64,000 bases of DNA, taken from positions 1-64,000 of IMG/VR virus record IMGVR_UViG_3300035703_000005; one strand, given 5' to 3'. The position numbers and the translations under genes were made by a program. The first letter of the stretch is position 1; each line of letters opens with the position of its first letter. The notes below the pieces were generated by a model. The model did no database searches. It was not told the origin of the DNA and saw only the letters and a list, made by a program, of their open reading frames with translations. Below, piece after piece: positions 46,974 to 61,362 of this stretch.

Positions 46974-47365
46974 TTTTTTTGAGAAAAATTTTCAAGAGCA
47001 TCCAAGTCATCTTTCAGTTCTTTTTCTCTTTTTTGATCATGATAATAAGACCACAGAGCATTGTGAACGTCCATCAGATGATCAACCCAGAAACCTGCAG
47101 GATAGATTCCCAGTGCATCTTGAAGACCACGATGACTAGTTCCTTCACTTTCTGCCTTACACATGATATGACAGATTGCCTGAACCATGTCTAGTTTGTC
47201 TTCTTCAGAAAGCATGAAGTACTTTCCTATGGCTCGTTGTTTTGCCTCTTCATTTTTCTTCTGAAGTTCTTTGCAAGCATCAGAATTCCACCATTTTTGT
47301 AGGGCTTTACCAAGATCATTTGGTTTTTGCAATTCTTCTGAATTTACTACTGGTTCTTTATCCAT
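46970..47365 (-). CDS. Hypothetical protein
   Basis: ORF track 46970..47410; probable start MDKEPV. Confidence 0.65.
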   Translation of the reverse strand: MDKEPVVNSEELQKPNDLGKALQKWWNSDACKELQKKNEEAKQRAIGKYFMLSEEDKLDMVQAICHIMCKAESEGTSHRGLQDALGIYPAGFWVDHLMDVHNALWSYYHDQKREKELKDDLDALENFSQKK

Positions 47366-47834
47366 AATGATACTGTCTCCATTCTTCAACGTTAGTTCTT
47401 TCAAGATCAAAGATCATTTTGTTTACGGGTGCTTGTGGTTTTTTCATGAGTTTCATTCCAGTATGTTCCAAAAGCATATTACCTTTTTTAGTATTGCAGG
47501 AACTACATGCAACCACAAGGTTTTCCCATGAGTCATCTCCACCTCTTGAACGAGGAAGAACGTGATCTATGGTTAGTTTAGATCTTGCACCACAATATTG
47601 GCAAGTATGATTATCCCTCTTATAAATCATAGAACGAGAAGGAGAAATATTCATAATCTTAGATAAAGGCAATTTTACATAATCTAAAAGTCGAATAACT
47701 CTACTTGAAAGAACTTGAGCTTTTTCTTTAAGGAGGAGAACTATGGCTCTTTTCCAGTTTGTAAAATTTATTGGTTCGTAACTAGAGTTTAAAACCAATA
47801 TTGTTTTGTATGGTTCTATTGGTAACTCATTCAT
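47358..47834 (-). CDS. HNH endonuclease, McrA-like
   Basis: RDNHTCQYCG...LTIDHVLPRSRGG...WENLVVACSSCNTKK. Confidence 0.92.
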   Translation of the reverse strand: MNELPIEPYKTILVLNSSYEPINFTNWKRAIVLLLKEKAQVLSSRVIRLLDYVKLPLSKIMNISPSRSMIYKRDNHTCQYCGARSKLTIDHVLPRSRGGDDSWENLVVACSSCNTKKGNMLLEHTGMKLMKKPQAPVNKMIFDLERTNVEEWRQYHYG

Positions 47835-48097: not shown

Positions 48098-48297
48098 TAA
48101 AATTCACTCCTACGTCTTGGTGGTTGGGGATTATCTTTCCATTTACAATATTCAGGAAGTTTCGACTTTTGTTCTTCAAAATATTGACAAAGTTGTGCAA
48201 CATCTGGAGGGTACTTAGGTCTATTAAGTTGATGAGTTATTGAATTAAACTGACATGTAAGATTAAATCCACATATAAGAAGATCAATCATCAACAC
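48097..48297 (-). CDS. Hypothetical Cys-containing protein
   Basis: ORF track. Confidence 0.6.
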   Translation of the reverse strand: MLMIDLLICGFNLTCQFNSITHQLNRPKYPPDVAQLCQYFEEQKSKLPEYCKWKDNPQPPRRRSEF

Positions 48298-48953
48298 TCA
48301 TCCATTTTAATTGGTTTTGTAACTTTACGAATCATCCAAGTTCCGTCACCATTATCTACCCAATATACTTGATCACCTTCTTTAAGGTCTGCTGCTTCTA
48401 AGAGATCATCTGGGAAAACTACATAGTATTCTCCACTTAGACCATCCATCTCAACTGGAAGATGCCATTTAACTACTTTATCAATATCTCTCTGAGTTGC
48501 ACTTGGAGTTACATTGCTGTAATACTCCTCAGGATAATAGTTCTCTTCCCAGAAAGAAGTCCAAGCACCTTTACATTCTGGAGAAGGATCGTCTTTATCG
48601 CAAGTCAAAGGTTTTTTGTTGTTTGCAATGACATACTCCAGATCACTATGACCCCAAGGACGCATATAGTCATCCTTTCCTTCGTAATATTCTCTTTCTG
48701 CAAGTGATGTTTTAAGAAGTTCTTTTTGTGCAACCACAGTTTCTTTCCAAACTTTTTTAAACTTGTCATCAAATTCTTCTAAGTAATATCCAAGAAACTC
48801 ATGTGCAGCCATTGCAAGAGTTTCTGCTTTATTATACTCACTTTTCTGAATCGCATCTGCAACAGAATCAATAATCTCACGAGCAGAAACAATCTTGGAT
48901 GTTACCATCTCAAGATCATTCATCACTTCCCACGTTTTAGAGCTCATTTGCAA
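48291..48953 (-). CDS. Hypothetical protein with C-terminal AbrB/MazE/SpoVT-like domain
   Basis: YYVVFPDDLLEAADLKEGDQVYWVDNGDGTWMIRK. Confidence 0.6.
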   Translation of the reverse strand: MQMSSKTWEVMNDLEMVTSKIVSAREIIDSVADAIQKSEYNKAETLAMAAHEFLGYYLEEFDDKFKKVWKETVVAQKELLKTSLAEREYYEGKDDYMRPWGHSDLEYVIANNKKPLTCDKDDPSPECKGAWTSFWEENYYPEEYYSNVTPSATQRDIDKVVKWHLPVEMDGLSGEYYVVFPDDLLEAADLKEGDQVYWVDNGDGTWMIRKVTKPIKMDEC

Positions 48954-49131: not shown

Positions 49132-49215
49132 AATTTTTGGTAATATAAGTAATTTATAATTATAAGAAACAGTTAAATAGGCTATATTATAGATAACTTG
49201 AAAATAAAAGTCAAG

Positions 49216-50058
49216 ATGAACCCCGAAATATTAGATCTTCACATTACTCATAATTGCAATTTAACTTGCGAAAGTTGTTCAGATTTTACTAATAATAGTC
49301 TTTCTAAAATGTTATCATTAGAAGAGGCTAAAAATTGGATGTCTCTGTGGAATCAAAGGATAACTCCAAAAAATTTTCTTATTCTGGGAGGAGAACCTAC
49401 TCTCCACAAAGATTTGGAAAAATTTCTTTACTTGTCTAGAAAAATGTGGCCAAAAAGTAATTTAATATTAATTACTAACGGATTTTTCTTACATCTACAT
49501 GAAAATTTATGGAAAACTTTAAAAAATACTAATACAATATTATCAATTTCTTTGCATGATAATTCAAAAGAATATATGCAAAAAATAACTCAAAATTTAA
49601 TATTAGCAGAAAAATGGAATAAAGATCACGAAATAATAGTAACATGTAATAAAGAGTATGAAAAATGGAGTACTATCTATAAAGGGTATGGAGCAAACAT
49701 TTTACCCTTTGAAGACAATGATCCACAATCAAGTTGGAACAGTTGTTATATGGATGGCAAATGTTTCCAACTTCATGAGGGAAAAATTTGGAAATGTCCA
49801 CCCATTGCATATTTGCCTTTACAAAAAGAAAAATACAAAGATTTACTATCACCAAAGTGGGATCCATACTTAAAATATAAACCACTAGAATCGACTTGTA
49901 GTGACGAAGAAATAATAGAATTTTTTAATAGAAAGTGCGAATCGGTGTGCGGAATGTGTCCAGCAAATCCAATGATAAAAAATAAAGTTACAAAAAGCCC
50001 ACTAATGTCTGTTAGTGAAACTGAAAAATATTTTTCCACTCTAGAAAAACATATTTAA
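49216..50058 (+). CDS. Radical SAM protein, paralog 1
   Basis: CNLTCESC, GGEP, ITNG; C-terminal Cys cluster; ORF track starts at 49198. Confidence 0.88.
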   Translation: MNPEILDLHITHNCNLTCESCSDFTNNSLSKMLSLEEAKNWMSLWNQRITPKNFLILGGEPTLHKDLEKFLYLSRKMWPKSNLILITNGFFLHLHENLWKTLKNTNTILSISLHDNSKEYMQKITQNLILAEKWNKDHEIIVTCNKEYEKWSTIYKGYGANILPFEDNDPQSSWNSCYMDGKCFQLHEGKIWKCPPIAYLPLQKEKYKDLLSPKWDPYLKYKPLESTCSDEEIIEFFNRKCESVCGMCPANPMIKNKVTKSPLMSVSETEKYFSTLEKHI

Positions 50059-51217
50059 ACTCTGGTATGTTTTGAAGAAGATTTTCATTGCGTTCTATAT
50101 CAATTGCTTTATTTTTTCTCAAAAATCTTTTTACATTTTGTTCATTCATATCCAAATCTAAAATGTTTAAGATTGGTTTGAATTGATTTGATATGTCCGT
50201 TTTGTATTGTAAGTTATACTTATCGATAAAGGAAATTAATTTCTCTTTCGTTTTACCTTTAAATTCTGTTGGTAAAATATCAATTCCATATATACCAAAT
50301 TCAGTTGCACCATCTATCAAACTCAATTCAAAATTACAATAATTAAATTTCTCACTAATATATTCTATATCAGTAAGATATTGAATAATTTCAGGTAATC
50401 TAAAAACATTTAAACAAGATACAGTAATATTTGTAGATCTATTAAATTTTTGATTTGCAAGAATTTTTAAATTTTTATCTACTATTTTCCAGTTAGTACC
50501 TTTTCTAATATACTCTGCTCTATTTTCTATTTCATCTATGCTAACAAAAACTGTTAATTTGTTAGGATTCCATTGATTCCAATAATCTAATACGTTTTTA
50601 TTCTTATAAGATAAAATTGAAATATTTGTATTGTACCAAAGTTCTATATTAGTTTTTTTCTTTTCTATTAATTTTTGAAGTAATTCATATTGTTCATCCA
50701 TAAGGAGAGTTTCGCCACCAGCAAACTCTATTAACTCCAAACAGTCAATATTATCTTCTATAAATTTATCAATATCCAAATTTTCAGCATGTTCTAATAT
50801 TTTTCCAGTAAAAGAACTACTCAATCTTTCCGAACACATCCTGCATTTAAAATTACACTTATTGCTAATTTTAAAATCCCATCCTTTAAATTTTATTGTT
50901 TTTAAAGATCCATCTTTATTGGTATTTTTTAATATAGTAGGAAATGAGTCTTTAAAAAAATTATTATATTTCTCTCTTAAACTAATTCCATCCAACTTTT
51001 CAACATTTTTACAAGAAAGACACGAATCAGGTAGATCATCTTTCAATAAAGATAATCTAAAATTATTCATTTTTTCTCCATTCCAAATTTCATGCAGAGA
51101 ATTATTTTTTACATTACCTAATGACAAATCGTTAGCACAACATGGAGTAACTATTCCATCTGGAAAAATTTCTAAGTATATCCAGGGAACTATGCACTTA
51201 GGATAAGTATTTTTCAT
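50012..51217 (-). CDS. Radical SAM protein with N-terminal SPASM/twitch domain
   Basis: CIVPW...PCC..LGNV....L.EIWNG...C.SC followed by CNFKCRMC and GGET. Confidence 0.88.
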   Translation of the reverse strand: MKNTYPKCIVPWIYLEIFPDGIVTPCCANDLSLGNVKNNSLHEIWNGEKMNNFRLSLLKDDLPDSCLSCKNVEKLDGISLREKYNNFFKDSFPTILKNTNKDGSLKTIKFKGWDFKISNKCNFKCRMCSERLSSSFTGKILEHAENLDIDKFIEDNIDCLELIEFAGGETLLMDEQYELLQKLIEKKKTNIELWYNTNISILSYKNKNVLDYWNQWNPNKLTVFVSIDEIENRAEYIRKGTNWKIVDKNLKILANQKFNRSTNITVSCLNVFRLPEIIQYLTDIEYISEKFNYCNFELSLIDGATEFGIYGIDILPTEFKGKTKEKLISFIDKYNLQYKTDISNQFKPILNILDLDMNEQNVKRFLRKNKAIDIERNENLLQNIPEFKYVFLEWKNIFQFH

Positions 51218-51219
51218 AA

Positions 51220-52182
51220 TTATCCTCTTTCAAGATCCAAAGTAACGCAATGAAAACAACCACTCAATGTTCTTGTTTGTCTCATTGGAAGCATAATGCA
51301 TTCGATGTCATATTTTTCTAATTCTTTTCGTGTAGGTTCCTGATGTTTTTCGAGAGCAACTAAATTGGGATTAATACTAAAAAGATTCATATTACACCAA
51401 GGCGAACAGTTATTGTATCCAGGGTAATACCCAACATCAACTGGTTCTGGGCACCAGATTATATCCCATGTTTTAAATGGACCTGGTAAATCTTCTTTAC
51501 TTTTAATTCTTGAAGGGTTTGCAAGTAATAATCCTTCTCTTAGAAATGCTACCGTAGTGTCAATGTGCATATAACTATAAACACCTTGAAGTAAATGTAC
51601 TTTTATTTCAGGTCCTACTAAAGATTGAAGCAACTCTGCACCCTTTATATTACCACTATTTGATACCAAATATAATAAGTCATCGTTGGCTCTGATAATA
51701 TTAGCTGCATCAAATGAAGGTGAATGTTCAGTTAAGGCTAGAATTTCCTTATTTCCTAAACAATCCTCATTATATAATTCATCATCATAACTACAAGAAA
51801 GTGGAATCAAATTTTCGAAGTGATGTGCAATAGATCCAAAATTATATTTCCTGGATTTTAAAGGCATTGGAGCAGCAAAAGTTTTTCCCCCATGAACAAA
51901 TACGCAATCTCTTGGGCAAAAATTATAGTAGGGTGTTGCCTCTCGATGAGGTCTCAATACTTCCACACCTTCTTGTTCTAACACTTTAACAAAAATTTCT
52001 AAATCTTCGTTAGCTTCATCAATAACCTGTTTTGGATATAATCCGGATTTCACATCCGAAACATCTTTCCTATCAGCGTAATTAATAAATCTGAGAGAAT
52101 TATCTATTTCAGGAACTCTAGCATAATCAGCAATACCAACTATAACTTTTTTTAATTTATCCCATTCATTAGTACTGTTCAT
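51220..52182 (-). CDS. Amidinotransferase (glycine / inosamine-phosphate amidinotransferase family)
   Basis: NSTNEWDKLKKVIVG, CPRD, FDAAN, MHIDT and SGCFHCVT carrying the Cys-His-Asp triad residues. Confidence 0.88.
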   Translation of the reverse strand: MNSTNEWDKLKKVIVGIADYARVPEIDNSLRFINYADRKDVSDVKSGLYPKQVIDEANEDLEIFVKVLEQEGVEVLRPHREATPYYNFCPRDCVFVHGGKTFAAPMPLKSRKYNFGSIAHHFENLIPLSCSYDDELYNEDCLGNKEILALTEHSPSFDAANIIRANDDLLYLVSNSGNIKGAELLQSLVGPEIKVHLLQGVYSYMHIDTTVAFLREGLLLANPSRIKSKEDLPGPFKTWDIIWCPEPVDVGYYPGYNNCSPWCNMNLFSINPNLVALEKHQEPTRKELEKYDIECIMLPMRQTRTLSGCFHCVTLDLERG

Positions 52183-53066
52183 TTTAAATTATCAATAATT
52201 TTTTTTACGCCTTGTTTAAAGTTAATTGGAGAATAATTTGGATAATAATTTAAAAGTTTTGTTAAATCAGGAACTCTTCTTTTAGCACTACCACGTCTAC
52301 CTTCAATTAACTGATAATTTGGATAATCATGCCCCAATAAAGTTCCAATTATTTTAGAAACTTCTAAAGAACTCAGTTCTTCATTACTTCCGATATTTAT
52401 TGTTTCATGAATTGCACATTTTTCTACACAAATAATTGTCGATTCAATAGCATCTTCGATATAAGTATAACATCTTGTTTCATTTGGACCAATAACTTTA
52501 TAAATTCCAAGTTTATGATTATCAATTTGATCATAGACTATATGGCCACTTTTTGTTTCTGGTCCATAAACATTGAAATACCTAATAATTACCCAAGGCA
52601 AATCACTGTTATGCAAATAATTTTCTCCTACCATTTTAGAAATTTTATAACTCCAACGAGGATTTGAAAGATCATCAACTTCAACAGAGTTATTTTCATA
52701 ACAAATTTCGGAATGAGACATTATTTCACTACTACTAGCATAAACAATTTTTTTTAAATTTGTACACTTTTTTGCAAACTCAAATATATTGAGATCTACT
52801 CTTGTATTATTTGAAATAACTTCATTTGGTCTTTCATAAAAATTAGTTGTTCCATTAATGGCTGCAAGATGATAAATTACATCAACATTATCAGGTAAAA
52901 TTGCAGTAGATTTAGAAAGATCTGTTTTTAAAAAAATGTGAGATTTAGGAATAGTATTTGATCTAGACATATTATCTACGGCAATTACATAATGACCTTT
53001 ATCATTAAGTTGTTTACATAATTCTGATCCAATAAGACCGGCAGCTCCCGTCACCAAGATATTCAT
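52179..53066 (-). CDS. NAD-dependent epimerase/dehydratase (extended SDR)
   Basis: GAAGLIG, YASSS, YKISK (YxxxK), RYFNVYGP. Confidence 0.93.
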   Translation of the reverse strand: MNILVTGAAGLIGSELCKQLNDKGHYVIAVDNMSRSNTIPKSHIFLKTDLSKSTAILPDNVDVIYHLAAINGTTNFYERPNEVISNNTRVDLNIFEFAKKCTNLKKIVYASSSEIMSHSEICYENNSVEVDDLSNPRWSYKISKMVGENYLHNSDLPWVIIRYFNVYGPETKSGHIVYDQIDNHKLGIYKVIGPNETRCYTYIEDAIESTIICVEKCAIHETINIGSNEELSSLEVSKIIGTLLGHDYPNYQLIEGRRGSAKRRVPDLTKLLNYYPNYSPINFKQGVKKIIDNLK

Positions 53067-53803
53067 TTATCTTCTCTAACTGTAATTTTTAATTTGGAGT
53101 TATCATTTTTTATTGCTTTAAATAATTCAACATCTCCAAAAATATCAATCATAAAATCAATATCCTTTGGCAAACACTTTCCACCATATCCTCTTAGGTT
53201 ATCATTTACTTCAAGATACGATTGGCCATTTTTGGACTTATTGAATGCGTTTAATAAATTATTATAATTTACGTCATATTTTTTACACATATTATAGTAA
53301 TGATTTGCAAAAACAACTTTCATTGCATGATAATTATTTCGCATCATCTTTAAAAGTTCCAACTCGACAAATTCAAGTTTTCTGAGTTTATAATTAAATC
53401 TATCAAAATTAACCAACAAACTATTATCACAGTTTGTCGCATAAAACATTCTCTTACAATTGAGGGAATCTTCCAGAGAATATCTTTCCCTCAAAAATTC
53501 TGGAAGATATGTCAATGGATTTTTAATTTTTTCCTGCAAATTATTGAAAAATCCCGGAATTACTGTACTTCTAACCACAATTTCAATTGTAGGATTTAAT
53601 GAAGAAATATTTAAACAAAGAGACTCCAATTCTTCAATATTTTGTTGAGTATTAGTTGGAATGCAAACAAAAACTAAATCACAATTAGAAATATCTTCTA
53701 AACTAGTATCTAAAAAAATATCGTGTATAATTATACTTTCATCGGGAAAAAGAGCTTTTTTTGTTGCCTTTCCAACTATTCCATATCCAACAATTCCGAT
53801 CAT
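53063..53803 (-). CDS. UDP-glucose/GDP-mannose dehydrogenase family protein, short form
   Basis: GYGIVG, FVCIPT, RSTVIPG, PEFLRE, GYGGKCLPKD. Confidence 0.9.
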   Translation of the reverse strand: MIGIVGYGIVGKATKKALFPDESIIIHDIFLDTSLEDISNCDLVFVCIPTNTQQNIEELESLCLNISSLNPTIEIVVRSTVIPGFFNNLQEKIKNPLTYLPEFLRERYSLEDSLNCKRMFYATNCDNSLLVNFDRFNYKLRKLEFVELELLKMMRNNYHAMKVVFANHYYNMCKKYDVNYNNLLNAFNKSKNGQSYLEVNDNLRGYGGKCLPKDIDFMIDIFGDVELFKAIKNDNSKLKITVREDK

Positions 53804-54306
53804 TTTAAAACTCCTGTTATTTGAATTGCATATCTATCTTCTAGACTAAGATTATAAAAAGCATGTGTTTTCAAATAATCCCACCCAAAACAATCTCCAG
53901 GATTCCAATTTGTAAAAAAATTATCCTCAATTTGAAGTATTTGGCCAGATATACCCTCTTCTAACATTACAACATATCTAACTATTTTGTCAATAGGTAC
54001 ATTATAAATTTTAATGTATTTTTCAAAAATATCTATATGCAAAGGCAGATATTGTCCAGGTTTAAAGTAATTGATAGCTACTGCAACATTATTCAAAAAA
54101 TTAAATTGTGGAATAATGTATTCAAATACACAATCTGGCATAAAACTAGGTTGATGACAATTATAAAGAGTCATATGATTTTCACTATGACCAGAATCTA
54201 TATATTGATTCATTAATTTTTGGTCTTTGTGTGTAGTAAGAAAATAATCGAGGTGGTGAAAATCAGATATTTCCCACTTTGGTGTTATATTAAACTTTTT
54301 GATCAT
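53800..54306 (-). CDS. Cupin / 2OG-Fe(II)-like hypothetical protein
   Basis: PGQYLPLHID, W.PGDCF.W....HAFYN, RYAIQITG. Confidence 0.6.
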   Translation of the reverse strand: MIKKFNITPKWEISDFHHLDYFLTTHKDQKLMNQYIDSGHSENHMTLYNCHQPSFMPDCVFEYIIPQFNFLNNVAVAINYFKPGQYLPLHIDIFEKYIKIYNVPIDKIVRYVVMLEEGISGQILQIEDNFFTNWNPGDCFGWDYLKTHAFYNLSLEDRYAIQITGVLK

Positions 54307-55091
54307 TTTCTTAATAATGGGGAATTTTTCTTTAAGGATTTTTTATTAGAAGGGCACATAGAACAAAATTTTTCTGCACCTTTATCAAAAAAATCTTCCA
54401 ATTCTTTGTCTGTACAATTTGGGGACAATGGGACATATTCCAAATAAGGATCCCATTTTTCGGATATATCATACTTTTCTTTCATCATAGGAAGAAATGC
54501 TAGTGGAGCACATTTCCATATTTTTCCTTGATGTAATTGAAAACATATTTGACCTGTTGGACAATTTTCCCAACTTTGTTTAGGATTATTATCTTCAAAA
54601 GGCATTATATCTTTACCATATCCCAAGTAAACTTGATTCCAATCTTTTATAGAATTATAAATTTTAATCTTAACTCCTTTGGATTTCCAGTCATTTATTG
54701 TTAATATTTTTTTACGTATTAATTGCAAATATGTCGGGTCATTACTATGAATAGAAATTGACAATGTAATATCATTTTTAATAATATCTTCAAATATTTC
54801 CGAATGCAAATGAATTAGAGTAAGATTGGTCACAATTTCTATATTAGAATTTGGCCACATTTTCCTAGTCAAATAACAATACTCTTTCAAATTTTTATGC
54901 AAAAATGGTTCACCACCCAATATTCCAATATTATCTGGAATTAATCTTTCATTCCAATAAGACATCCACAATTCACACTCGTTTAAACTAACATGAGTAT
55001 CAAATCCATGATTCATAAAATGCGAACAACTATCACAAGTAAAGTTACATTTATGTGTAATGTGAATATCTAAATTTGGAATTCTTTTCAT
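54303..55091 (-). CDS. Radical SAM protein, paralog 2
   Basis: CNFTCDSC, GGEP; collinear with 49216..50058; ATGA coupling at 55088-55091. Confidence 0.88.
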   Translation of the reverse strand: MKRIPNLDIHITHKCNFTCDSCSHFMNHGFDTHVSLNECELWMSYWNERLIPDNIGILGGEPFLHKNLKEYCYLTRKMWPNSNIEIVTNLTLIHLHSEIFEDIIKNDITLSISIHSNDPTYLQLIRKKILTINDWKSKGVKIKIYNSIKDWNQVYLGYGKDIMPFEDNNPKQSWENCPTGQICFQLHQGKIWKCAPLAFLPMMKEKYDISEKWDPYLEYVPLSPNCTDKELEDFFDKGAEKFCSMCPSNKKSLKKNSPLLRK

Positions 55092-55678
55092 TTTTGAAAT
55101 ACAGACATATTGGGTAAGTAAGGATAATCCCTGTGGCTCCATTTTTTACCGGGAATTTTTTTCCGCTCATTTAGTAATTCAATTCCCGTTTTGGCCACCT
55201 CTGGAGTCATGTAGTAATGATACCCAATAGTATCTATGTCTTGTTCAGCCCATGGACGACTAAGATCACGACCATCATAAGACATTTTTTTTAATTCACG
55301 ATAATCATTTTTATCAGACAAAAGAATCATTCCACCTCTACCCAAAGGTAAATGTTTTTTAAATTGAAAACTTAAACACATAAAAGTATTTGAGATATAT
55401 GTGTTTTCCCCCCAAAAAACTGCTGCATCAATAATATTAGTGTTACCTAAACGATAATAATTATCCCACTCTTCGTTTTTCCAATTCCATCTCAATCCCA
55501 ATTTCATTAAAGTCATGGGAACTGAAATGTATGTTTGTGTAGGTATCGTTATATCATTACACCCAGTATATCGTAAACACAATTCTAATGCATGAGTACA
55601 AGAATCAGTGGCTACCCCATATGGGGAACCAAAAAATTCGGATACTTTTTGTTCAAAATCAGATACTAAATGAAACAT
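55088..55678 (-). CDS. DegT/DnrJ/EryC1/StrS PLP aminotransferase, shortened
   Basis: FE..V.EFFG, SCTHALEL, IIDAA, SFQFKKHL..GRGGMI. Confidence 0.85.
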   Translation of the reverse strand: MFHLVSDFEQKVSEFFGSPYGVATDSCTHALELCLRYTGCNDITIPTQTYISVPMTLMKLGLRWNWKNEEWDNYYRLGNTNIIDAAVFWGENTYISNTFMCLSFQFKKHLPLGRGGMILLSDKNDYRELKKMSYDGRDLSRPWAEQDIDTIGYHYYMTPEVAKTGIELLNERKKIPGKKWSHRDYPYLPNMSVFQK

Positions 55679-55697
55679 ATATTATACTCATCCACGA

Positions 55698-56585
55698 TTA
55701 TTGATTTTCCAATTCATCAATATTATTAACATTTATTATAAAGTCATTCGGTTTGCCATAAAGAAAAAAATCTTCCAAAGAATAAGAATCTCTAAATTTT
55801 TTCCACCATAAATTTACAGCTCTATTAGTAAAATGTAGTCCAGGAAAGTCAGATGTTCTAATTATATTCTTAGTATAACTTCCAATTGTATTACTTTGAG
55901 CTATTAATGGCAAACAATAAGTAACTCCAGAATGGCCCATGATATAGTCTATGGTTACATTTGGGTGATGTCTTATAGCATGATGATACCATTTGGGTTC
56001 TAACAATCTACTACATTGAGTCCATTGGAAATTAGAAACTCTTTTTGTCAAATCAAATTTCCCATCTGTAGTGATACGTTTAATAATTTTTTCAACATAA
56101 GATCTAGTTACTAAAGCACCTCCCATTGAATGTTTTGCCAAAATTCTATGCAAAAAACATGGAATCATTGCATCATTTTCAAAAGACAGTAAAATACAAT
56201 CCCAATCATATGGAATAATATTCATTAAATATTGCCAATCAAAGTGCCAGTAATCAATAAAACTAAGATCATAGTCATCTTCCATTAATAAAACATACTG
56301 ATCATTAGTTGTTTCTAACCAATGTTTTATTAATTCCAAATAAGTCAAAGTAATAGCGCAATGTATGATGTGTAACGACTTTCTAGGGTCTATATCGACA
56401 TCATTTAAAATTAATTTATCTTTCCATTCAGAAAAGTTATGAAGTTGATATTTAGAAGTAGAATATCGAGTAAAAGTTTTTATTTTATATTTTTCATATT
56501 GGGTTTCAGTATATTCTCTTCTATCTGGTCTTTCATCCAGATTTAAATAAATGATGGGAGGTAATCCTTTTAATTTATCAGTCAT
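55698..56585 (-). CDS. Glycosyltransferase family 25-like
   Basis: YLNLDERPDRR, LLMEDD. Confidence 0.75.
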   Translation of the reverse strand: MTDKLKGLPPIIYLNLDERPDRREYTETQYEKYKIKTFTRYSTSKYQLHNFSEWKDKLILNDVDIDPRKSLHIIHCAITLTYLELIKHWLETTNDQYVLLMEDDYDLSFIDYWHFDWQYLMNIIPYDWDCILLSFENDAMIPCFLHRILAKHSMGGALVTRSYVEKIIKRITTDGKFDLTKRVSNFQWTQCSRLLEPKWYHHAIRHHPNVTIDYIMGHSGVTYCLPLIAQSNTIGSYTKNIIRTSDFPGLHFTNRAVNLWWKKFRDSYSLEDFFLYGKPNDFIINVNNIDELENQ

Positions 56586-56587
56586 GT

Positions 56588-57397
56588 TTATAATTTAGGA
56601 AGAGCTATATAATTTTGAGAGTCTATTTTATTTACGTTCCACTCATAAAGTCTTTTAACAACAATATCTTCAACTCTACCATAAATTTGTCTATTTTTTT
56701 TATTATGTTCTAAAGCTAAAAGAACCGATATTTTTTTATCTAAAATATCAGTATCGTATTTTTCGAAAAGGTCTTCTCTTATTTTTTGTTCATATTCTTC
56801 CATTTCTGGATTATTATAAGTTCCCTCAAAATTTTCAACTCTTTTTGAATATGGATGTGGTAAATGAATAACTCTATTACTTTGTGGTATTATCTTTTTT
56901 ATAGACATTCCAGATAATTTTAATCTACCCAAAATCTCATCATCTTCAAAGGAATAATACTTACCCATTTTTTCATTATATCCATTAACACGCAAAAAAT
57001 CTTTTTTTCTGATGTATAACAATCCAAATATTCCTCTATATAAATCATTTTTTATATGATTAATTCCAGAAATACATGAATTTTCTTCAAGTATATAATC
57101 TTCAAAAAAATTATAATAGGGATTTAATATATGATCACAGTCAAGTTTTAATAATTTATCTGAAGACGCTACATCTGCGGCTAAGTTTAAAGGTTGAGGT
57201 TGATTAAAATACTTTTGATTAGGAACTGTTATTATTTTTATTCTCTTATCTAAAGAAGTCAAATGATTGATAGGAACATCGGAACTCCAATCGACAATAA
57301 TAATTTCAGATACTTCTGGAAACATTATCCAAGTATTTAAAGAAATAATTAAAGATTTTTCTCTATTCTTACAAGCGCAAATTATACTTACAGACAT
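56588..57397 (-). CDS. Glycosyltransferase, GT-A fold (GT2/GT7-like)
   Basis: IIIVDWSSD, LNLAA, KLDCD (DxD), F..VNGYNE.M..Y..EDDE. Confidence 0.8.
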   Translation of the reverse strand: MSVSIICACKNREKSLIISLNTWIMFPEVSEIIIVDWSSDVPINHLTSLDKRIKIITVPNQKYFNQPQPLNLAADVASSDKLLKLDCDHILNPYYNFFEDYILEENSCISGINHIKNDLYRGIFGLLYIRKKDFLRVNGYNEKMGKYYSFEDDEILGRLKLSGMSIKKIIPQSNRVIHLPHPYSKRVENFEGTYNNPEMEEYEQKIREDLFEKYDTDILDKKISVLLALEHNKKNRQIYGRVEDIVVKRLYEWNVNKIDSQNYIALPKL

Positions 57398-57406
57398 AAT
57401 ATATTA

Positions 57407-58261
57407 TTAATAAACTATAGGGATCATAAGATTTTTTCTTTGATATGAATCTAGTGAAAATAAATCGGTTAATGAAAATTTATCACTTTCTTCTTTCCAC
57501 CATTTTAATGTAAAATAATCAGATTTTTTGGCCATTGAATTTATAGGTTCTTTGTAACCATTACTACTAACGCTGGAAGTAGTGATAAACAGGGGAAATG
57601 AATATGTGATTCCTATTTCATAGGGAACAAAGTCTGCAGATTGGTAGTGATAAATTGGCCAATTATCTCCATATCCATAGTTTTCATACAATTGAAATTT
57701 TCCATTTACATAGTGCATTTCAATTAATTTTTTTGCATATCTCCTATTAATTAAATAACAAGTTGCAGAATGATTATTCCGTGTCCTTTTCGTAAGACCC
57801 ATTGGTACATATTTTTCACCTATAATATGCAACTGTACACAATCCCAGTTAATCGGTAAGTGTTGCTCAAAATATTTCCAATTAAAATTCCAATATTTGG
57901 TTGTTAAAAATGAAAGATCATCTTCCAAAATTAAACAAGTTTCTGACACAGAGTTGTTATACCAATCAACTATACTCTGTAGTTGATTAATTAAAATCGA
58001 TAAACAACTTATTTTGTTATTTATTTTTTTTATTAATAATTTATTCTTCCATTCATTAAAATTTTGAGGAGAGTGTTTATTAGCAGACACTCTCACATAA
58101 TCAGTTATACCAAATATGTTGAATTGATTTTCAATGTATTCTTTTCTATCTGTCCTTTCATCAAGATTTAAATATCTAATATGGGGAATGCCCTTGAGTT
58201 TATATTTGATATTTTCAACATCAGACATACCATGTAATAACAGAATATCTAGTTCCTTCAA
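57407..58261 (-). CDS. Glycosyltransferase family 25-like, paralog
   Basis: YLNLDERTDRK, LILEDD, LP.NWDCVQL, YLINRRYAKKL. Confidence 0.75.
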   Translation of the reverse strand: MKELDILLLHGMSDVENIKYKLKGIPHIRYLNLDERTDRKEYIENQFNIFGITDYVRVSANKHSPQNFNEWKNKLLIKKINNKISCLSILINQLQSIVDWYNNSVSETCLILEDDLSFLTTKYWNFNWKYFEQHLPINWDCVQLHIIGEKYVPMGLTKRTRNNHSATCYLINRRYAKKLIEMHYVNGKFQLYENYGYGDNWPIYHYQSADFVPYEIGITYSFPLFITTSSVSSNGYKEPINSMAKKSDYFTLKWWKEESDKFSLTDLFSLDSYQRKNLMIPIVY

Positions 58262-59423
58262 TAACAGGCATTATTTCGTGAGGGTACATAAAATTAGAAG
58301 GAAATACAATTACAGATCCAACACTGTTACGAATCATCATTTCTCTATCAAAAAATGCAAATTCACCTCCCACATAGTCATCATTTAAAGTTAGAGAACA
58401 GGATACACTTCTTTGTTGATGAATAAACGAATCTGTATGTTGAGTGTAAAATTGTCCAGATTCATACATCAATAAGTCATATCCTGTATCAATACTGGGA
58501 GAAAATTCTAAAAATTCTTTTGAATACATTTCAACTACTTTTAATAGTTGTTGGTGAAGTTCTACATCTATAAATTTTCTAACTTCGTAATTTTTATCTA
58601 TGATATTAGAATCAGAAAGTTGAATAACAGAACAATTTCTAATATTAGTATTTAAAATTCCATCCCCAACTAAAGTTTTATTCCATTCTTGACTATTTTT
58701 GTATTCTTGCAATATTTTATTACAAAGATCTGCAGACACAACATTATCATAAATTTTAATAAAATCTTCCAACTTTCTGGTAGATTTTAATGTGATTGAA
58801 GAAATATGTTGATCCGATTTTACAATACTATTTTCTTCTTTAGTTGTAGTTTTATTTTCTTTTTTATCAGACTCAATCAAATTCGATTCTTTTTCTTTAT
58901 CAAAATAAGCATAAGAACACTCACCACGACTTCTTACATAATGCAAGAAAACCTGTGAATAGTAACTACCTTTATACTCTTCTCTCCAGTGTGGTGCAAT
59001 ACGTCCAAGATAGACCATTGCATCACCTGGATTTAAACTAACAAATTTTTTTTCTTTTTGAGGAGTTTCGATCCAGATTGGCCATGGATAATCACCATCA
59101 AGATGTAATGTCAATGAAATTTCACAGGCATCTCTGTCAACATGATTCTCCAGAACAGATCCCTCCTTATATACTCTTGCGTAAGAATAGGTGGGAAGAA
59201 CAGTTTCCTCAATTAATGTAGATACTTCGGGAGTTTTTTCACAAAGTAATTCCAAAAAAGAAATATGATTATATATTGAATGTGAATTTGGAGATTGATC
59301 ATCTCCTGATAAATTTTCTTTTTCACAATAAAGTTTAAATTCATCGGACAAAATTTTAGATCTTTCGGGAGAAATAAAATTAGGAATGATCAAATAATTA
59401 TTTTCAATTAGTTTATTATTCAT
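58221..59423 (-). CDS. Tandem two-domain 2OG-Fe(II) dioxygenase
   Basis: Domain 1 HVDRDACEISLT...HWR...FLHYV; domain 2 HTD...YVGG...HEI.PV..GTRYSVITW. Confidence 0.88.
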   Translation of the reverse strand: MNNKLIENNYLIIPNFISPERSKILSDEFKLYCEKENLSGDDQSPNSHSIYNHISFLELLCEKTPEVSTLIEETVLPTYSYARVYKEGSVLENHVDRDACEISLTLHLDGDYPWPIWIETPQKEKKFVSLNPGDAMVYLGRIAPHWREEYKGSYYSQVFLHYVRSRGECSYAYFDKEKESNLIESDKKENKTTTKEENSIVKSDQHISSITLKSTRKLEDFIKIYDNVVSADLCNKILQEYKNSQEWNKTLVGDGILNTNIRNCSVIQLSDSNIIDKNYEVRKFIDVELHQQLLKVVEMYSKEFLEFSPSIDTGYDLLMYESGQFYTQHTDSFIHQQRSVSCSLTLNDDYVGGEFAFFDREMMIRNSVGSVIVFPSNFMYPHEIMPVIEGTRYSVITWYV

Positions 59424-60246: not shown

Positions 60247-60774
60247 TTATGCAAAAGTACAATATATTACGTTAATATATTGTACTCTAAAATCTACAGA
60301 AGTATTAAGGGGACCATTAGCTGAAGTAAAAGTAACTGGATGAGTGTGAGATCCACTATTACCATTATTACCAGTATTACCACCATTAGCAACTCTAGTA
60401 ACACTTCCAAAAGTAGGAGAAGGAGATCCAGTTTGAGCATTACCTCCAGAATTAGCTGGATGAGCATGTTGTACCATGGTATTTACATCAATGGTATTCG
60501 CATTAGCTGCAAGTCCAGAAATTGATACAGGGACATTAGCAGTTACGGGTACAGAAATAAGAGTATTCGTAAATACATTTGTTCCGCCTGAACCTGCTCC
60601 AGTTCCACTAACTACTCTTAACGTTTTATCATTATGAGTTGTTACTATAGACCATCCAGTTGGTGCTGATGCCTGATAAAAAACGACAGGTGTTGTTTGT
60701 GGAAAAATACCATATTTGGAATTTAATGAAGTAGAGTCACTAAAAGTTATTCCAGTGCTTGTTAATACTGCCAT
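60247..60774 (-). CDS. Short tail fibre / collar-like protein, paralog 1
   Basis: FYQASAPTGW...HNDKTLRVVSG, HAHP, GSHTHP, DFRVQYINVIYC. Confidence 0.7.
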   Translation of the reverse strand: MAVLTSTGITFSDSTSLNSKYGIFPQTTPVVFYQASAPTGWSIVTTHNDKTLRVVSGTGAGSGGTNVFTNTLISVPVTANVPVSISGLAANANTIDVNTMVQHAHPANSGGNAQTGSPSPTFGSVTRVANGGNTGNNGNSGSHTHPVTFTSANGPLNTSVDFRVQYINVIYCTFA

Positions 60775-60795
60775 TTTTTTATAATTTTATTTTAT

Positions 60796-61332
60796 TTAGT
60801 TTAAAGTGCAGATAATAACATCTACATATTGGACCCTAAAATCAAGAGTAGTTGCACCAGGGCCATTGGCTGAAGAAAAAGTAACTGGATGAGAGTGAGA
60901 TCCACTATTACCATAGTTACCTGTACTATTTCCAGGAGCTGTACCACCCTGAGATCCTGACGCAGGGCTGGCACCACCAGCACCTACGTTTCCTCCAGAA
61001 TTTAGTGGATGAGCATGTTGAGGTACTGTATTAACACTTAAAGTTGTACCTCCAGCAGATAATCCGGAAATTGATACTGGAACATTAGCACTCACTGGGC
61101 GACTAGCAAATGTTCCAGAAAAAGTATTTGTTCCAGCAGCAGTTCCACCACTGGTGGTATTATTAACCACTCTCAATGCTTTATCATTTTGGGTAGTTAC
61201 TTGAGTCCATCCAGTTGGAGCAGCAGACCTTATAAAAACCATAGGAGTTGACTGAGGAATGATTCCATATTTGGAATTTAAAGTCCCTCCGCCACTACCA
61301 AAGATTATTCCAGTGCTTGTTAATACTGCCAT
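60796..61332 (-). CDS. Short tail fibre / collar-like protein, paralog 2
   Basis: Same architecture: APTGWTQ...NDKALRV, HAHP, GSHSHP, DFRVQYVDVIIC. Confidence 0.7.
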   Translation of the reverse strand: MAVLTSTGIIFGSGGGTLNSKYGIIPQSTPMVFIRSAAPTGWTQVTTQNDKALRVVNNTTSGGTAAGTNTFSGTFASRPVSANVPVSISGLSAGGTTLSVNTVPQHAHPLNSGGNVGAGGASPASGSQGGTAPGNSTGNYGNSGSHSHPVTFSSANGPGATTLDFRVQYVDVIICTLN

Positions 61333-61362
61333 TTTATGACACTTTTTCGATTATTTTCATAT

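What the first reader, a model, noticed from the sequence alone, without database searches (positions are those of the whole stretch)
49198..59423. Phage biosynthetic cluster for a probable guanidino (amidinated) sugar, with three radical SAM enzymes
Seen: contiguous, mostly overlapping genes for a double dioxygenase, GT25, GT-A, GT25, DegT aminotransferase, radical SAM, cupin, NDP-sugar dehydrogenase, epimerase, amidinotransferase with intact triad motifs, SPASM radical SAM and a convergent radical SAM. Known: oxidation, transamination and transamidination is the logic of streptidine synthesis (StsC/StrS-type aminotransferase plus StrB amidinotransferase). Inference: the phage builds an unusual cationic guanidino-sugar, further altered by radical chemistry, and transfers it to virion proteins, host LPS or DNA. 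I know of no described phage pathway of this kind.
Basis: partly seen in the sequence, partly recalled or inferred. Interest (0 to 1): 0.88.

Follow-up and report, generated by a model that had tools for sequence, protein, structure and literature searches.

The report
Phage gene set for guanidino-sugar glycan
A freshwater T4-like cyanophage carries a conserved, widely distributed gene module (mini sugar aminotransferase, small iron oxygenase, streptomycin-type amidinotransferase, several glycosyltransferases) that most likely makes and attaches an amino sugar whose amine is turned into a guanidino group. That chemistry has not been described for any virus and has not been shown at the bench.

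Summary
Family labels hold, with four qualifiers. The DegT protein is a 196-aa mini form. The sugar dehydrogenase lacks its nucleotide-binding C-terminal domain. The "cupin" carries a 2OG/Fe(II) oxygenase motif. The SPASM/twitch domain is N-terminal.

The amidinotransferase (AmT) is real: StrB1 E=7e-59, with catalytic Cys/His/Asp kept.

The cluster is not a chance neighbourhood:
- AmT occurs on 317 viral contigs.
- Within 10 kb it is accompanied by the mini-DegT (75/81 loci), GT25-like transferases (77/81) and the small oxygenase (69/81), through several different gene orders.
- All 12 genes show dN/dS of 0.03-0.31.

The dehydrogenase and epimerase are rare accessories (5-7/81).

Natural variants lose the oxygenase and AmT together while keeping mini-DegT and GT25 genes. 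This fits AmT as a tailoring step on the aminotransferase product.

No protein has a membrane segment, and no flippase or polymerase is present, so assembly is cytoplasmic.

The acceptor (virion protein, LPS core or other) is unresolved. The cultured relative S-SCSM2R has the same genes, published as unexplained "antibiotic synthesis genes".

Interest 0.65.

The parts
58221..59423 (-). Two-domain oxygenase (400 aa). The C-terminal half is a P4H-type 2OG/Fe(II) oxygenase. The N-terminal half is a conserved viral domain with an invariant H-x-D...H pattern.
   Evidence: Pfam PF13640 1.6e-15. phrog_2954/3531 for the N-terminal half. Invariant H94, D96, H145 and H329, D331, H382, R392 in 21 homologues. 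No Pfam or PDB hit for the N-terminal half. Present in 57/81 loci.
57407..58261 (-). GT25-like glycosyltransferase a. Probable start is M12 at 58228.
   Evidence: phrog_2835 2.3e-42. PF01755 only 15 bits. Family profile hits Mimivirus R655 GT 1.4e-5. Invariant DD of the DxD type. Present in 75/81 loci.
56588..57397 (-). GT-A fold glycosyltransferase (accessory).
   Evidence: Glyco_transf_7C 1.4e-8 and GT2 hits. Present in 23/81 loci.
55698..56585 (-). GT25-like glycosyltransferase b.
   Evidence: phrog_2835 1.4e-31. Atlas neighbours carry PF01755. Present in 77/81 loci, with 2-6 paralogues per locus.
55088..55678 (-). Mini DegT-family PLP enzyme (196 aa), a probable sugar aminotransferase.
   Evidence: PF01041 7.5e-15. 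Length is 193-212 aa in 30 homologues, with invariant D84 and K108. AF2 pLDDT 92. Foldseek finds perosamine synthase, ArnB and BtrR at TMq 0.66-0.77. It lacks about 45 internal residues and the C-terminal domain. dN/dS 0.18.
54303..55091 (-). Radical SAM enzyme 1 (262 aa) with a C-terminal Cys-rich region. Accessory.
   Evidence: PF04055 3.8e-11. CxxxCxxC visible. Best PDB hit 7wzv 2.3e-4. Present in 27/81 loci.
53800..54306 (-). Small cupin/DSBH protein (168 aa) with a 2OG/Fe(II)-oxygenase metal and cosubstrate motif.
   Evidence: Invariant H90, D92, H148, R158. AF2 pLDDT 95. Foldseek finds cupins, P4H, AsqJ and AspH at TM 0.4-0.54. Present in 69/81 loci. Gained and lost together with AmT.
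53063..53803 (-). Short UDP-glucose-dehydrogenase-like protein (246 aa). Accessory.
   Evidence: PF00984 1e-13, TIGR03026 4.4e-27. GxGxxG and the GGKCLPKD catalytic-Cys motif are visible. It aligns to UGDH 7kws residues 72-283 of 393, so it has no C-terminal domain. Present in 5/81 loci. The short form recurs in L082 (262 aa) and L219 (265 aa). dN/dS 0.19.
52179..53066 (-). SDR nucleotide-sugar epimerase/dehydratase/decarboxylase-type enzyme. Accessory.
   Evidence: PF01370 2.3e-38. Best PDB hit is the 6zl6 group at 2.6e-27, then UDP-glucuronate decarboxylase UXS1 at 2.4e-19. LegB 1.3e-22. Present in 7/81 loci.
51220..52182 (-). L-arginine-dependent amidinotransferase (320 aa), in the StrB1-like branch.
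   Evidence: StrB1 1bwd 7e-59, HsvA 3e-37, AGAT 3e-32, SxtG 3e-31, all full length. D92, D158, H206, D208, R225 and C312 kept. 317 viral contigs. 2280 metagenome proteins. dN/dS 0.10.
50012..51217 (-). Radical SAM enzyme with an N-terminal twitch/SPASM domain (401 aa). Accessory.
   Evidence: NF033640 1.4e-88, 297.7 bits against cutoff 170. Pfam SPASM at residues 8-70 and Radical_SAM at 117-266. Present in 16/81 loci.
49198..50058 (+). Convergent radical SAM enzyme 2, a paralogue of 54303-55091. Its 3' end overlaps the neighbouring gene by 47 bp.
   Evidence: PF04055 2.3e-11. 46% identity to radical SAM 1. dN/dS 0.03.

Best explanation
The region is a horizontally mobile glycan-tailoring module of T4-like cyanophages.

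Composition:
- Conserved core: a mini DegT-type PLP aminotransferase, a small Fe(II)/2-oxoglutarate oxygenase-like cupin, a StrB1-like amidinotransferase, two to six soluble GT25-like glycosyltransferases, and usually a two-domain oxygenase.
- Extras in this window: a short UDP-glucose-dehydrogenase-like enzyme, an SDR closest to UDP-glucuronate-acting enzymes, a GT-A transferase and three radical SAM enzymes.

Proposed mechanism:
1. A keto sugar is supplied by the host pool, or in this phage by its own dehydrogenase and SDR.
2. The mini-DegT transaminates the keto sugar to an amino sugar.
3. The amidinotransferase forms a Cys312 S-amidino intermediate from L-arginine, releasing ornithine.
4. 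It passes the amidino group to that amine, giving an N-amidino (guanidino) sugar.
5. The small oxygenase acts at the same step. Its chemistry is unknown, and it travels with the amidinotransferase.
6. The GT25-like enzymes assemble or attach the glycan on a cytoplasmic acceptor, most plausibly a phage structural protein or the host's LPS core.

What is shown and what is inferred:
- Shown: gene identities, intact catalytic residues, purifying selection, and repeated co-occurrence.
- Inferred: the substrate, the order of steps, the product and the acceptor.
For: - AmT is a full-length, triad-intact relative of StrB1. Its donor-binding residues are kept across the clade.
- Linkage in 81 AmT loci: sDegT 75, GT25 77, cupin 69. 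The linkage survives rearranged gene orders (L064, L071, L072, L075, L078).
- In 40 sDegT-anchored loci with 4 kb of flank on both sides, the cupin is present in 22/26 with AmT and 2/14 without (p=2e-5). GT25 is present in 19/26 against 2/14.
- The AmT-less variant L180 keeps the two-domain oxygenase, six GT25 paralogues and sDegT. It lacks the cupin and AmT together.
- sDegT has the fold and the PLP Lys/Asp of sugar aminotransferases.
- In Flavobacterium phage immuto a short DegT is followed instead by an N-acetyltransferase-type gene, an NDP-sugar epimerase and GTs. That is the same logic with a different N-tailoring enzyme.
- More distant AmT relatives also sit among sugar enzymes and GTs: L082 (SDR, short UGDH, cupin, short DegT), L086, L087, L088 and L089.
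- Campylobacter phages place a distant AmT among radical SAM and GT-A genes.
- dN/dS is 0.03-0.31 for all 12 genes.
- No membrane segments are predicted.
Against: - No biochemical datum exists for any of these proteins.
- sDegT lacks the C-terminal domain, and the dehydrogenase lacks the UDP-binding domain, so NDP-sugar recognition is uncertain.
- The enzymes that would make the keto substrate are absent from most loci.
- StrB1's own substrate is a cyclitol phosphate, not a nucleotide sugar. HsvA, also a relative, acts on polyamines.
- The GT25 assignment is below Pfam's threshold.
- The co-occurrence statistics are not corrected for relatedness of the contigs.
- No RNA run was listed that holds the gene.
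Confidence: 0.45

Rival explanations
1. The module makes a diffusible small molecule of the aminocyclitol or aminoglycoside type (streptidine-like), meaning an "antibiotic" or signalling compound. This is the reading offered by the S-SCSM2R authors.
For: - The best solved relative of AmT is the streptomycin enzyme StrB1.
- sDegT also matches BtrR and the scyllo-inosose aminotransferases.
- Small radical SAM enzymes with auxiliary clusters oxidise cyclitols in butirosin biosynthesis (BtrN, established knowledge). BtrN gives a weak hit to the twitch domain.
- The S-SCSM2R paper calls these "antibiotic synthesis genes".
Against: - No inositol-phosphate synthase, cyclitol dehydrogenase, kinase, phosphatase or exporter is present in the cluster.
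- Two to six glycosyltransferase paralogues fit glycan building better.
- Identity to Streptomyces StrB-type genes is only about 37%.
- The radical SAM genes are absent from most loci.
Confidence: 0.12
2. The amidinotransferase works on a free amino acid or polyamine, producing guanidinoacetate, homoarginine or an amidino-polyamine. It would be a metabolic gene, and its neighbours are unrelated island genes.
For: - AGAT, HsvA and SxtG are significant relatives.
- JGI names many family members "glycine amidinotransferase".
- Cyanophage islands are mosaics, and the region has lower GC than the rest of the window.
Against: - The linkage to sDegT, cupin and GT25 persists through rearrangements and in distant lineages.
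- The cupin and AmT are lost together.
- Similarity to StrB1 is much stronger than to AGAT or HsvA (203 bits against 115-132).
Confidence: 0.12
3. The enzymes act directly on a protein. The oxygenases hydroxylate Lys or Pro residues of a phage structural protein. The GT25 enzymes glycosylate the hydroxyl, as in collagen. The amidinotransferase converts a protein amine (Lys or Orn) into a guanidino group.
For: - The C-terminal oxygenase domain is P4H-type.
- GT25 includes collagen hydroxylysine galactosyltransferases (established knowledge).
- The family profile hits a Mimivirus GT.
- Three tandem tail-fibre-tip-like genes lie just upstream and co-occur in about 47/81 loci.
- All proteins are soluble.
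Against: - No known amidinotransferase of this family acts on proteins.
- This reading leaves no role for the sDegT aminotransferase, although it is the most constant partner.
- The upstream fibre-like genes are missing from the rearranged lineages that keep the core.
Confidence: 0.1
4. The module hypermodifies phage DNA, by glycosylated or amidinated bases, to evade restriction.
For: - The S-SCSM2R authors suggest its many GTs may glucosylate DNA.
- Campylobacter Firehammervirus phages carry an AmT. From memory, these phages are known for modified guanine.
Against: - No base hydroxymethylase, DNA transglycosylase (DpdA-type), or T4-type alpha/beta-glucosyltransferase was found in the cluster.
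- GT25 enzymes are not known to act on DNA.
- The Campylobacter AmT is only 25% identical, and its neighbours are not homologous.
Confidence: 0.06
5. The cluster is a decaying or accidental assembly of gene fragments, with truncated DegT and dehydrogenase pseudogenes and no joint function.
For: - DegT is half the usual length and the dehydrogenase is two thirds of it.
- The region is AT-rich relative to the genome.
Against: - The short lengths are constant across 30 or more homologues at 52-81% identity, with catalytic residues invariant.
- dN/dS is 0.18-0.19.
- The AF2 models are compact and confident.
- Two independent assemblies are colinear.
Confidence: 0.03

Closest known systems
StrB1, L-arginine:inosamine-phosphate amidinotransferase of streptomycin biosynthesis (PDB 1bwd), paired with the StsC aminotransferase
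   Same: AmT aligns end to end with StrB1 (E=7e-59) and keeps the Cys/His/Asp triad and the arginine-binding residues. As in streptidine synthesis, a DegT/StsC-family aminotransferase is its constant partner, giving the logic amine formation followed by amidination.
   Different: - Identity to Streptomyces genes is only about 37-45%.
- There is no cyclitol synthase, dehydrogenase, kinase or phosphatase.
- The aminotransferase is a 196-aa mini form.
- The partners are glycosyltransferases and Fe/2OG oxygenases.
- The genome is a virus.
Synechococcus phage S-SCSM2R ORF301-310 (PQ898602; PMC12801897)
   Same: The cluster is syntenic: two-domain oxygenase, GT25-type GTs, 195-aa DegT, radical SAM, 164-aa oxygenase-like protein and AmT. 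AmT is 76% identical and sDegT 68%.
   Different: - S-SCSM2R is marine. It lacks the short dehydrogenase, the SDR, the N-twitch radical SAM and the convergent radical SAM.
- It has an extra GT between the radical SAM and the cupin, and a GT2 after AmT.
- The authors treated three of the genes as separate "antibiotic synthesis genes" and proposed no pathway.
Phage and giant-virus self-encoded glycosylation clusters: the Flavobacterium phage immuto glycan cluster, and Mimivirus fibril and chlorovirus capsid glycosylation (established knowledge)
   Same: These viruses encode sugar aminotransferase, SDR and multiple soluble GTs, with no Wzx/Wzy machinery. Phage immuto has a short DegT of the same kind, at 31% identity.
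   Different: In those systems the amine is N-acylated or left free. None is reported to contain an amidinotransferase.
Ara4N (ArnA/ArnB/Ugd) and legionaminic/pseudaminic acid (LegB/LegC, PseB/PseC) amino-sugar pathways
   Same: This window's accessory trio of UGDH-like enzyme, SDR and DegT mirrors Ugd-ArnA-ArnB. The SDR's best solved relatives act on UDP-glucuronate. sDegT's best NCBIfam hit is LegC, and the SDR's second-best is LegB. In L219, sDegT, a short UGDH and an SDR sit with a CMP-sugar synthetase and sialyltransferase-like GTs.
   Different: All scores are far below the equivalog cutoffs. The UGDH-like protein has no UDP-binding domain. There is no formyl- or acetyltransferase, and an amidinotransferase stands in its place.
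Campylobacter Firehammervirus (CP220, F379) amidinotransferase operon
   Same: It is a myovirus AmT embedded among several radical SAM genes and GT-A-like transferases.
   Different: AmT identity is only 25%. None of the neighbours is detectably homologous to the window's genes, and there is no DegT.

Membership tests
Amidinotransferase family (AGAT/StrB1 branch of the guanidino-group-modifying, pentein, superfamily) | Full-length sequence homology to characterised members | tested here: met
   StrB1 7e-59 (residues 4-319), HsvA 3e-37, AGAT 3e-32, SxtG 3e-31.
Amidinotransferase family (AGAT/StrB1 branch of the guanidino-group-modifying, pentein, superfamily) | Catalytic Cys-His-Asp triad and the acidic residues that hold the guanidinium | tested here: met
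   C312 (FHC), H206 and D208 (MHID), D158 (FDAAN), D92 (PRD) and R225 align with the StrB1/AGAT residues. They are invariant or near-invariant.
Amidinotransferase family (AGAT/StrB1 branch of the guanidino-group-modifying, pentein, superfamily) | Arginine-dependent amidino transfer activity | not testable with these tools
   Needs an enzyme assay.
StrB1 orthologue (scyllo-inosamine-4-phosphate amidinotransferase, streptidine pathway) | Presence of the cyclitol pathway partners (inositol dehydrogenase, kinase, phosphatase) | tested here: not met
   None was found among the 12 genes or their flanks. Cellular StrB-type genes are about 37% identical.
DegT/DnrJ/EryC1/StrS sugar aminotransferases | PLP Schiff-base lysine and the pyridine-N aspartate in the fold-type I large domain | tested here: met
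   K108 and D84 are invariant in 30 sequences. Profile and fold match perosamine synthase, ArnB and BtrR.
DegT/DnrJ/EryC1/StrS sugar aminotransferases | Two-domain architecture of about 360-400 aa, including the C-terminal small domain | tested here: not met
   The protein is 196 aa and ends near residue 255-262 of 375-aa templates. About 45 residues are missing between profile positions 52 and 55. TM normalised to the target is only 0.35-0.42.
UDP-glucose/GDP-mannose dehydrogenase family | NAD-binding GxGxxG and the catalytic cysteine motif GGxCxxKD | tested here: met
   GYGIVG at the N terminus and GGKCLPKD are visible in the translation. PF00984 1e-13, TIGR03026 4.4e-27.
UDP-glucose/GDP-mannose dehydrogenase family | C-terminal UDP/GDP-binding domain | tested here: not met
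   The protein ends at the equivalent of residue about 283 of 393 in 7kws. There is no PF03720 hit. The score of 94.9 bits is below the subfamily cutoff of 189.8.
Glycosyltransferase family 25 | Match to PF01755 at the gathering threshold | tested here: not met
   15.3 bits against 24 for 57407-58228, and no hit for 55698-56585. A relative in L180 scores 21.7 bits.
Glycosyltransferase family 25 | GT-A type DxD motif and remote homology to GT25 members | tested here: inconclusive
   An invariant DD is present. The profile hits Mimivirus R655 GT at 1.4e-5 over the N-terminal 95 residues only. Atlas neighbours at 0.97-0.98 carry PF01755 in 11-98% of members.
Radical SAM superfamily; N-terminal-twitch subfamily NF033640 | CxxxCxxC cluster motif, and a score above the curated cutoff for NF033640 | tested here: met
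   All three proteins carry CxxxCxxC and hit PF04055. 50012-51217 scores 297.7 bits against a cutoff of 170.
Fe(II)/2-oxoglutarate-dependent oxygenases (for the 168-aa protein) | H-x-D...H facial triad and a basic residue about 10 positions after the distal His, on a double-stranded beta-helix | tested here: inconclusive
   The motif is invariant (H90, D92, H148, R158) and the fold is cupin/DSBH. No Pfam, NCBIfam or PHROG hit was found, and TM scores are only 0.4-0.54.

The most novel reading that the evidence does not exclude
Viruses of picocyanobacteria make a sugar that carries a guanidino (N-amidino) group, a strongly cationic monosaccharide not known from any natural glycan. Their own soluble glycosyltransferases then build it into a glycan on the virion or on the infected cell's surface. 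The step is optional: natural amidinotransferase-less variants carry the plain amino sugar. That gives an evolutionary switch of surface charge, with consequences for adsorption, defence evasion or grazing.
Probability: 0.3. Interest if true: 0.85.

Novelty: new variant of a known kind. Interest (0 to 1): 0.65.

Why it matters
- Phage-encoded glycosylation is known, but an amidinotransferase wired into such a cluster is not.
- If the product is a guanidino sugar, it would be new carbohydrate chemistry.
- It would come from a gene family that is abundant in aquatic viromes: 317 IMG/VR contigs for AmT, at least 589 for the mini aminotransferase, and thousands of metagenome proteins.
- The family has no close cellular counterpart. 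The best cellular relative is 47% identical, and none was found in picocyanobacteria.
- The mini aminotransferase (196 aa) and the mini dehydrogenase (246 aa) are also of interest as minimal, selected versions of two-domain enzymes.
- A cultured phage with the core module exists (S-SCSM2R on Synechococcus WH7803), so the hypothesis can be tested directly.

Tried and rejected
- Megablast of the cluster against GenBank phages found nothing.
- The promoter and terminator scan found no more sites than shuffled sequence, so it did not define an operon.
- No RNA run was listed for AmT, so transcription could not be examined.
- A literature search for PDB entry 7wzv, the best hit of radical SAM 1, returned only irrelevant papers. 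Its function stays unknown, and the Atlas search gave only generic radical SAM neighbours.
- The small gene upstream of AmT in Campylobacter phage F379 is not a homologue of the 168-aa cupin (hhalign probability 0.1). No other F379 neighbour is homologous either.
- The N-terminal half of the two-domain oxygenase has no Pfam or PDB match and no relation to the 168-aa cupin. Only the invariant H-x-D...H pattern supports the "double dioxygenase" label. The PHROG label "ferrochelatase" for that domain is not backed by anything seen here.
A smaller alignment worked.
- Names attached to distant AmT clusters were uninformative.
- The pseudogene or decay reading was rejected on conservation and dN/dS.

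Full report
**What the window is.** The 64-kb window is part of IMG/VR contig UViG_3300035703_000005, which is 248.8 kb. It comes from a subsurface/freshwater metagenome, and near-identical DNA occurs in lake, wetland and freshwater runs. It is a T4-like myovirus. Baseplate hub, wedge, tail-tube-cap genes and a 2289-aa tail fibre lie at 8-36 kb, and gp32 lies at 36326-37249. Its closest GenBank relative is Synechococcus phage S-SCSM2R, at about 79% nucleotide identity in core genes. The finding lies in the accessory region. That region is more AT-rich (GC 0.27-0.30) than the rest of the window (0.33-0.38).

**Checking the observation.** All twelve ORFs exist at the stated coordinates and are packed with 4-bp overlaps or gaps of a few bases. 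Profile searches confirm the family of each, with qualifiers that matter for the interpretation:
- The DegT protein is 196 aa against a usual length of about 370.
- The dehydrogenase is 246 aa against about 400. It keeps the GxGxxG and GGxCxxKD motifs but ends before the nucleotide-binding C-terminal domain.
- The "cupin" has an invariant H-x-D...H...R pattern typical of Fe(II)/2-oxoglutarate oxygenases. It has a confident cupin/DSBH model but no family hit.
- The "SPASM radical SAM" belongs to the N-terminal-twitch subfamily NF033640 (297.7 bits, cutoff 170).
- The two other radical SAM proteins are paralogues at 46% identity.
- The GT25 label rests on PHROG 2835, a profile hit to Mimivirus R655 and Atlas neighbours. 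It does not reach the Pfam threshold.
- Only the C-terminal half of the "double dioxygenase" is statistically a 2OG oxygenase. The N-terminal half has just an invariant H-x-D...H pattern.

**The amidinotransferase.** The 320-aa protein aligns over its full length with StrB1 (7e-59). It aligns more weakly with HsvA, AGAT and SxtG. The nucleophilic Cys (FHC), the His/Asp pair (MHID), the triad Asp (FDAAN) and the PRD aspartate are all in place, and they are conserved through the viral clade. The roles of these residues are taken from the published AGAT and StrB1 structures, recalled from memory.

The family is large and viral:
- It occurs on 317 IMG/VR contigs.
- It has 2280 metagenome proteins at E<=1e-10, and the top 120 are all at least 68% identical.
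- Only 58 clusters at 50% identity reach E<=1e-30 among 1.84 billion representatives.

In one genome per species of 185,579 bacteria and archaea, the best relative is 47% identical (a Bdellovibrionales MAG). Streptomyces and filamentous cyanobacteria are at 36-43%, and no picocyanobacterium appears. The gene is therefore not a recent capture from the host.

**Is the cluster a functional unit?** Four lines of evidence say yes.

1. Co-occurrence. I tabulated the window's proteins against 81 AmT-anchored loci:
   - AmT 81
   - GT25b 77
   - sDegT 75
   - GT25a 75
   - cupin 69
   - two-domain oxygenase 57
   - radical SAM 27
   - GT-A 23
   - N-twitch radical SAM 16
   - SDR 7
   - short dehydrogenase 5

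2. Persistence through rearrangement. The core survives different gene orders. One example is cupin, an unknown gene, sDegT, five or six GT25 paralogues, then AmT in L064, L071, L072, L075 and L078.

3. The reciprocal test.
   - sDegT is on at least 589 viral contigs.
   - Of 40 sDegT-anchored loci with 4 kb on both sides, 26 have AmT.
   - The cupin is present in 22/26 with AmT against 2/14 without (Fisher p=2e-5).
   - GT25 is present in 19/26 against 2/14.
   - The SDR and the dehydrogenase show no association.
   - These p-values ignore relatedness.
   - A clear natural variant is L180. It has the two-domain oxygenase, six GT25 paralogues and sDegT, then goes straight to the downstream AbrB-like gene, with the cupin and AmT missing together.

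4. Selection and assembly. Pairwise dN/dS against L003 is 0.03-0.31 for all twelve genes, including the shortened ones. The arrangement is not an assembly artefact: L003 is colinear across the whole cluster, and a 6.7-kb contig from another study covers 50012-55336 at about 96% identity.

**What the shortened enzymes are.** The mini-DegT is 193-212 aa in 30 homologues at 52-81% identity (a few ORFs extend to 234 aa). The PLP lysine (K108), the cofactor aspartate (D84) and the GRGG loop are invariant. Its model is confident (pLDDT 92) and superposes on the large domain of sugar aminotransferases such as GDP-perosamine synthase, ArnB, BtrR, PglE and PseC (TMq 0.66-0.77). It lacks an internal segment of about 45 residues and the whole C-terminal domain.

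Short forms of the same kind occur in two megaphage genomes and in Flavobacterium phage immuto. In immuto the short DegT is followed by an N-acetyltransferase-type gene ("pilin glycosylation protein"), an NDP-sugar epimerase and GTs. This parallel is the strongest comparative argument. The same mini enzyme is coupled to an N-acyl tailoring step in one lineage and to an amidinotransferase in another.

The short dehydrogenase also recurs at 246-265 aa in unrelated contexts (L082, L219). Why a form without the nucleotide-binding domain is selected remains unexplained.

**Sugar context.** The SDR's best solved relatives are the 6zl6 group (2.6e-27) and then human UDP-glucuronate decarboxylase. From memory, the 6zl6 group is Bacillus cereus UDP-glucuronate 4-epimerase. 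Together with the adjacent UGDH-like gene, this gives an internally consistent uronic-acid branch in this phage (UDP-Glc to UDP-GlcA to a 4-keto intermediate), reminiscent of Ugd-ArnA-ArnB.

A LegB/LegC-like reading is also possible. sDegT's best NCBIfam hit is LegC and the SDR's second-best is LegB. In L219, sDegT, a short UGDH and an SDR sit with a CMP-sugar cytidylyltransferase and sialyltransferase-like GTs.

More distant AmT relatives are likewise embedded among sugar enzymes:
- L082-84: SDR, short UGDH, cupin, short DegT, radical SAM, and two further AmT-like genes.
- L086: three SDRs, an RmlC-like isomerase, GT7-type GTs and a carbamoyltransferase.
- L087: GT61, GT2, GT4 and many radical SAM genes.
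- L088: a bacterial chromosome, with AmT next to a GT.
- L089: an aldolase-SDR fusion and an SDR epimerase.

Campylobacter Firehammervirus phages place a 25%-identical AmT among five radical SAM genes and GT-A-like genes. Those neighbours are not homologous to the window's genes.

**Mechanism proposed.** A keto sugar comes from the host pool, or in this phage from its own dehydrogenase and SDR. The mini-DegT aminates it. AmT forms a Cys312 S-amidino intermediate from arginine and transfers the group to the new amine. The small oxygenase acts in the same sub-module, with unknown chemistry. Possibilities include supplying the carbonyl by oxidising a carbinol, or hydroxylating the product. The GT25-like enzymes build or attach the glycan.

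None of the twelve proteins has a predicted membrane segment. There is no flippase, polymerase or polyprenyl-phosphate transferase, so assembly is cytoplasmic and the acceptor must be reachable there. I cannot decide between virion proteins and the LPS core.

Three tandem tail-fibre-tip-like genes lie immediately upstream (60247-61884, with Atlas Gp10_C/Collar neighbours at 0.95-0.96). They co-occur in about 47/81 loci. That is a hint towards virion proteins, but they are absent from the rearranged lineages. The radical SAM enzymes are lineage-specific extras whose role I cannot assign.

**Comparison with the literature.** The S-SCSM2R paper (PMC12801897) lists ORF305 (AHBA-synthase family), ORF306 (radical SAM) and ORF309 (inosamine amidinotransferase) as "antibiotic synthesis genes". 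It says they were never before reported in cyanophages and that their purpose is unclear. It lists the neighbouring GTs separately as cell-wall modification genes. No paper in the searched library combines phage, amidinotransferase, glycosyltransferase and guanidino in a relevant way. The genes have therefore been seen, but the module, its distribution and the pathway reading have not been described.

**Verdict.** The aminotransferase-amidinotransferase-glycosyltransferase logic stands and is strengthened by comparative data. The specific "oxidation" enzymes and the three radical SAM enzymes are accessories, and the NDP-sugar nature of the substrate is uncertain. I file this as a new variant of phage-encoded glycan clusters, with interest 0.65.

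Noticed in passing
window 60247-61884 (-): Three tandem paralogues of 173-178 aa, rich in Gly, Ser, Thr and Asn, with paired His motifs. They have no Pfam or PHROG hit. Their Atlas neighbours are Gp10_C/Collar tail-fibre-tip domains (0.95-0.96). They lie directly upstream of the cluster, co-occur with it in about 47/81 loci, and show dN/dS of 0.16-0.19.
   Followed up: partly
window 47358-47834 (-): An HNH endonuclease gene is 92-99% identical in loci whose AmT is only 69-71% identical to the window's. This pattern is expected of a recently spreading homing endonuclease.
   Followed up: no
window 49198-52182 compared with 52179-59423, against L003: Synonymous divergence from L003 is uneven. 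dS is 0.34-0.47 for AmT, the N-twitch radical SAM and radical SAM 2, against 0.67-1.29 for the other nine genes. This suggests recombination inside the cluster.
   Followed up: no
window 50012-50058: The convergent radical SAM gene (+) and the N-twitch radical SAM gene (-) overlap by 47 bp at their 3' ends.
   Followed up: no
L171 10354-11247 (S-SCSM2R ORF266): S-SCSM2R has a second, very distant amidinotransferase-like gene. It is 21% identical to the window's AmT and keeps the catalytic Cys. It sits next to KdsA/KdsB and 2OG oxygenases, and its authors report it in the virion proteome. No counterpart is in this window.
   Followed up: partly
L082 (ENA metagenome contig), whole locus: One 17-kb contig carries three amidinotransferase-like genes (53%, 35% and 22% identity), two cupin168-like genes, both a short (262 aa) and a full-length (399 aa) UGDH, an SDR and a 227-aa DegT.
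   Followed up: partly
Proteins P0122, P0125, P0126, P0127, P0136 (alignment A6): Several 44-50% identical AmT clusters have replaced the catalytic cysteine with Ser or Asn (FHS, FHN, FRS, LHS). These are possibly inactive or mechanistically different homologues.
   Followed up: no
window 48291-48953 (-): A 220-aa protein with a C-terminal AbrB/MazE-like domain follows the cluster in many loci, including the AmT-less variant L180.
   Followed up: no
L128 and L129 (Bdellovibrionota MAG contigs): A cupin168-like gene (26-28% identity) lies immediately upstream of the AmT homologue. It is the only phage-type partner found next to cellular AmT genes. The L129 protein gives a faint PhyH hit.
   Followed up: partly
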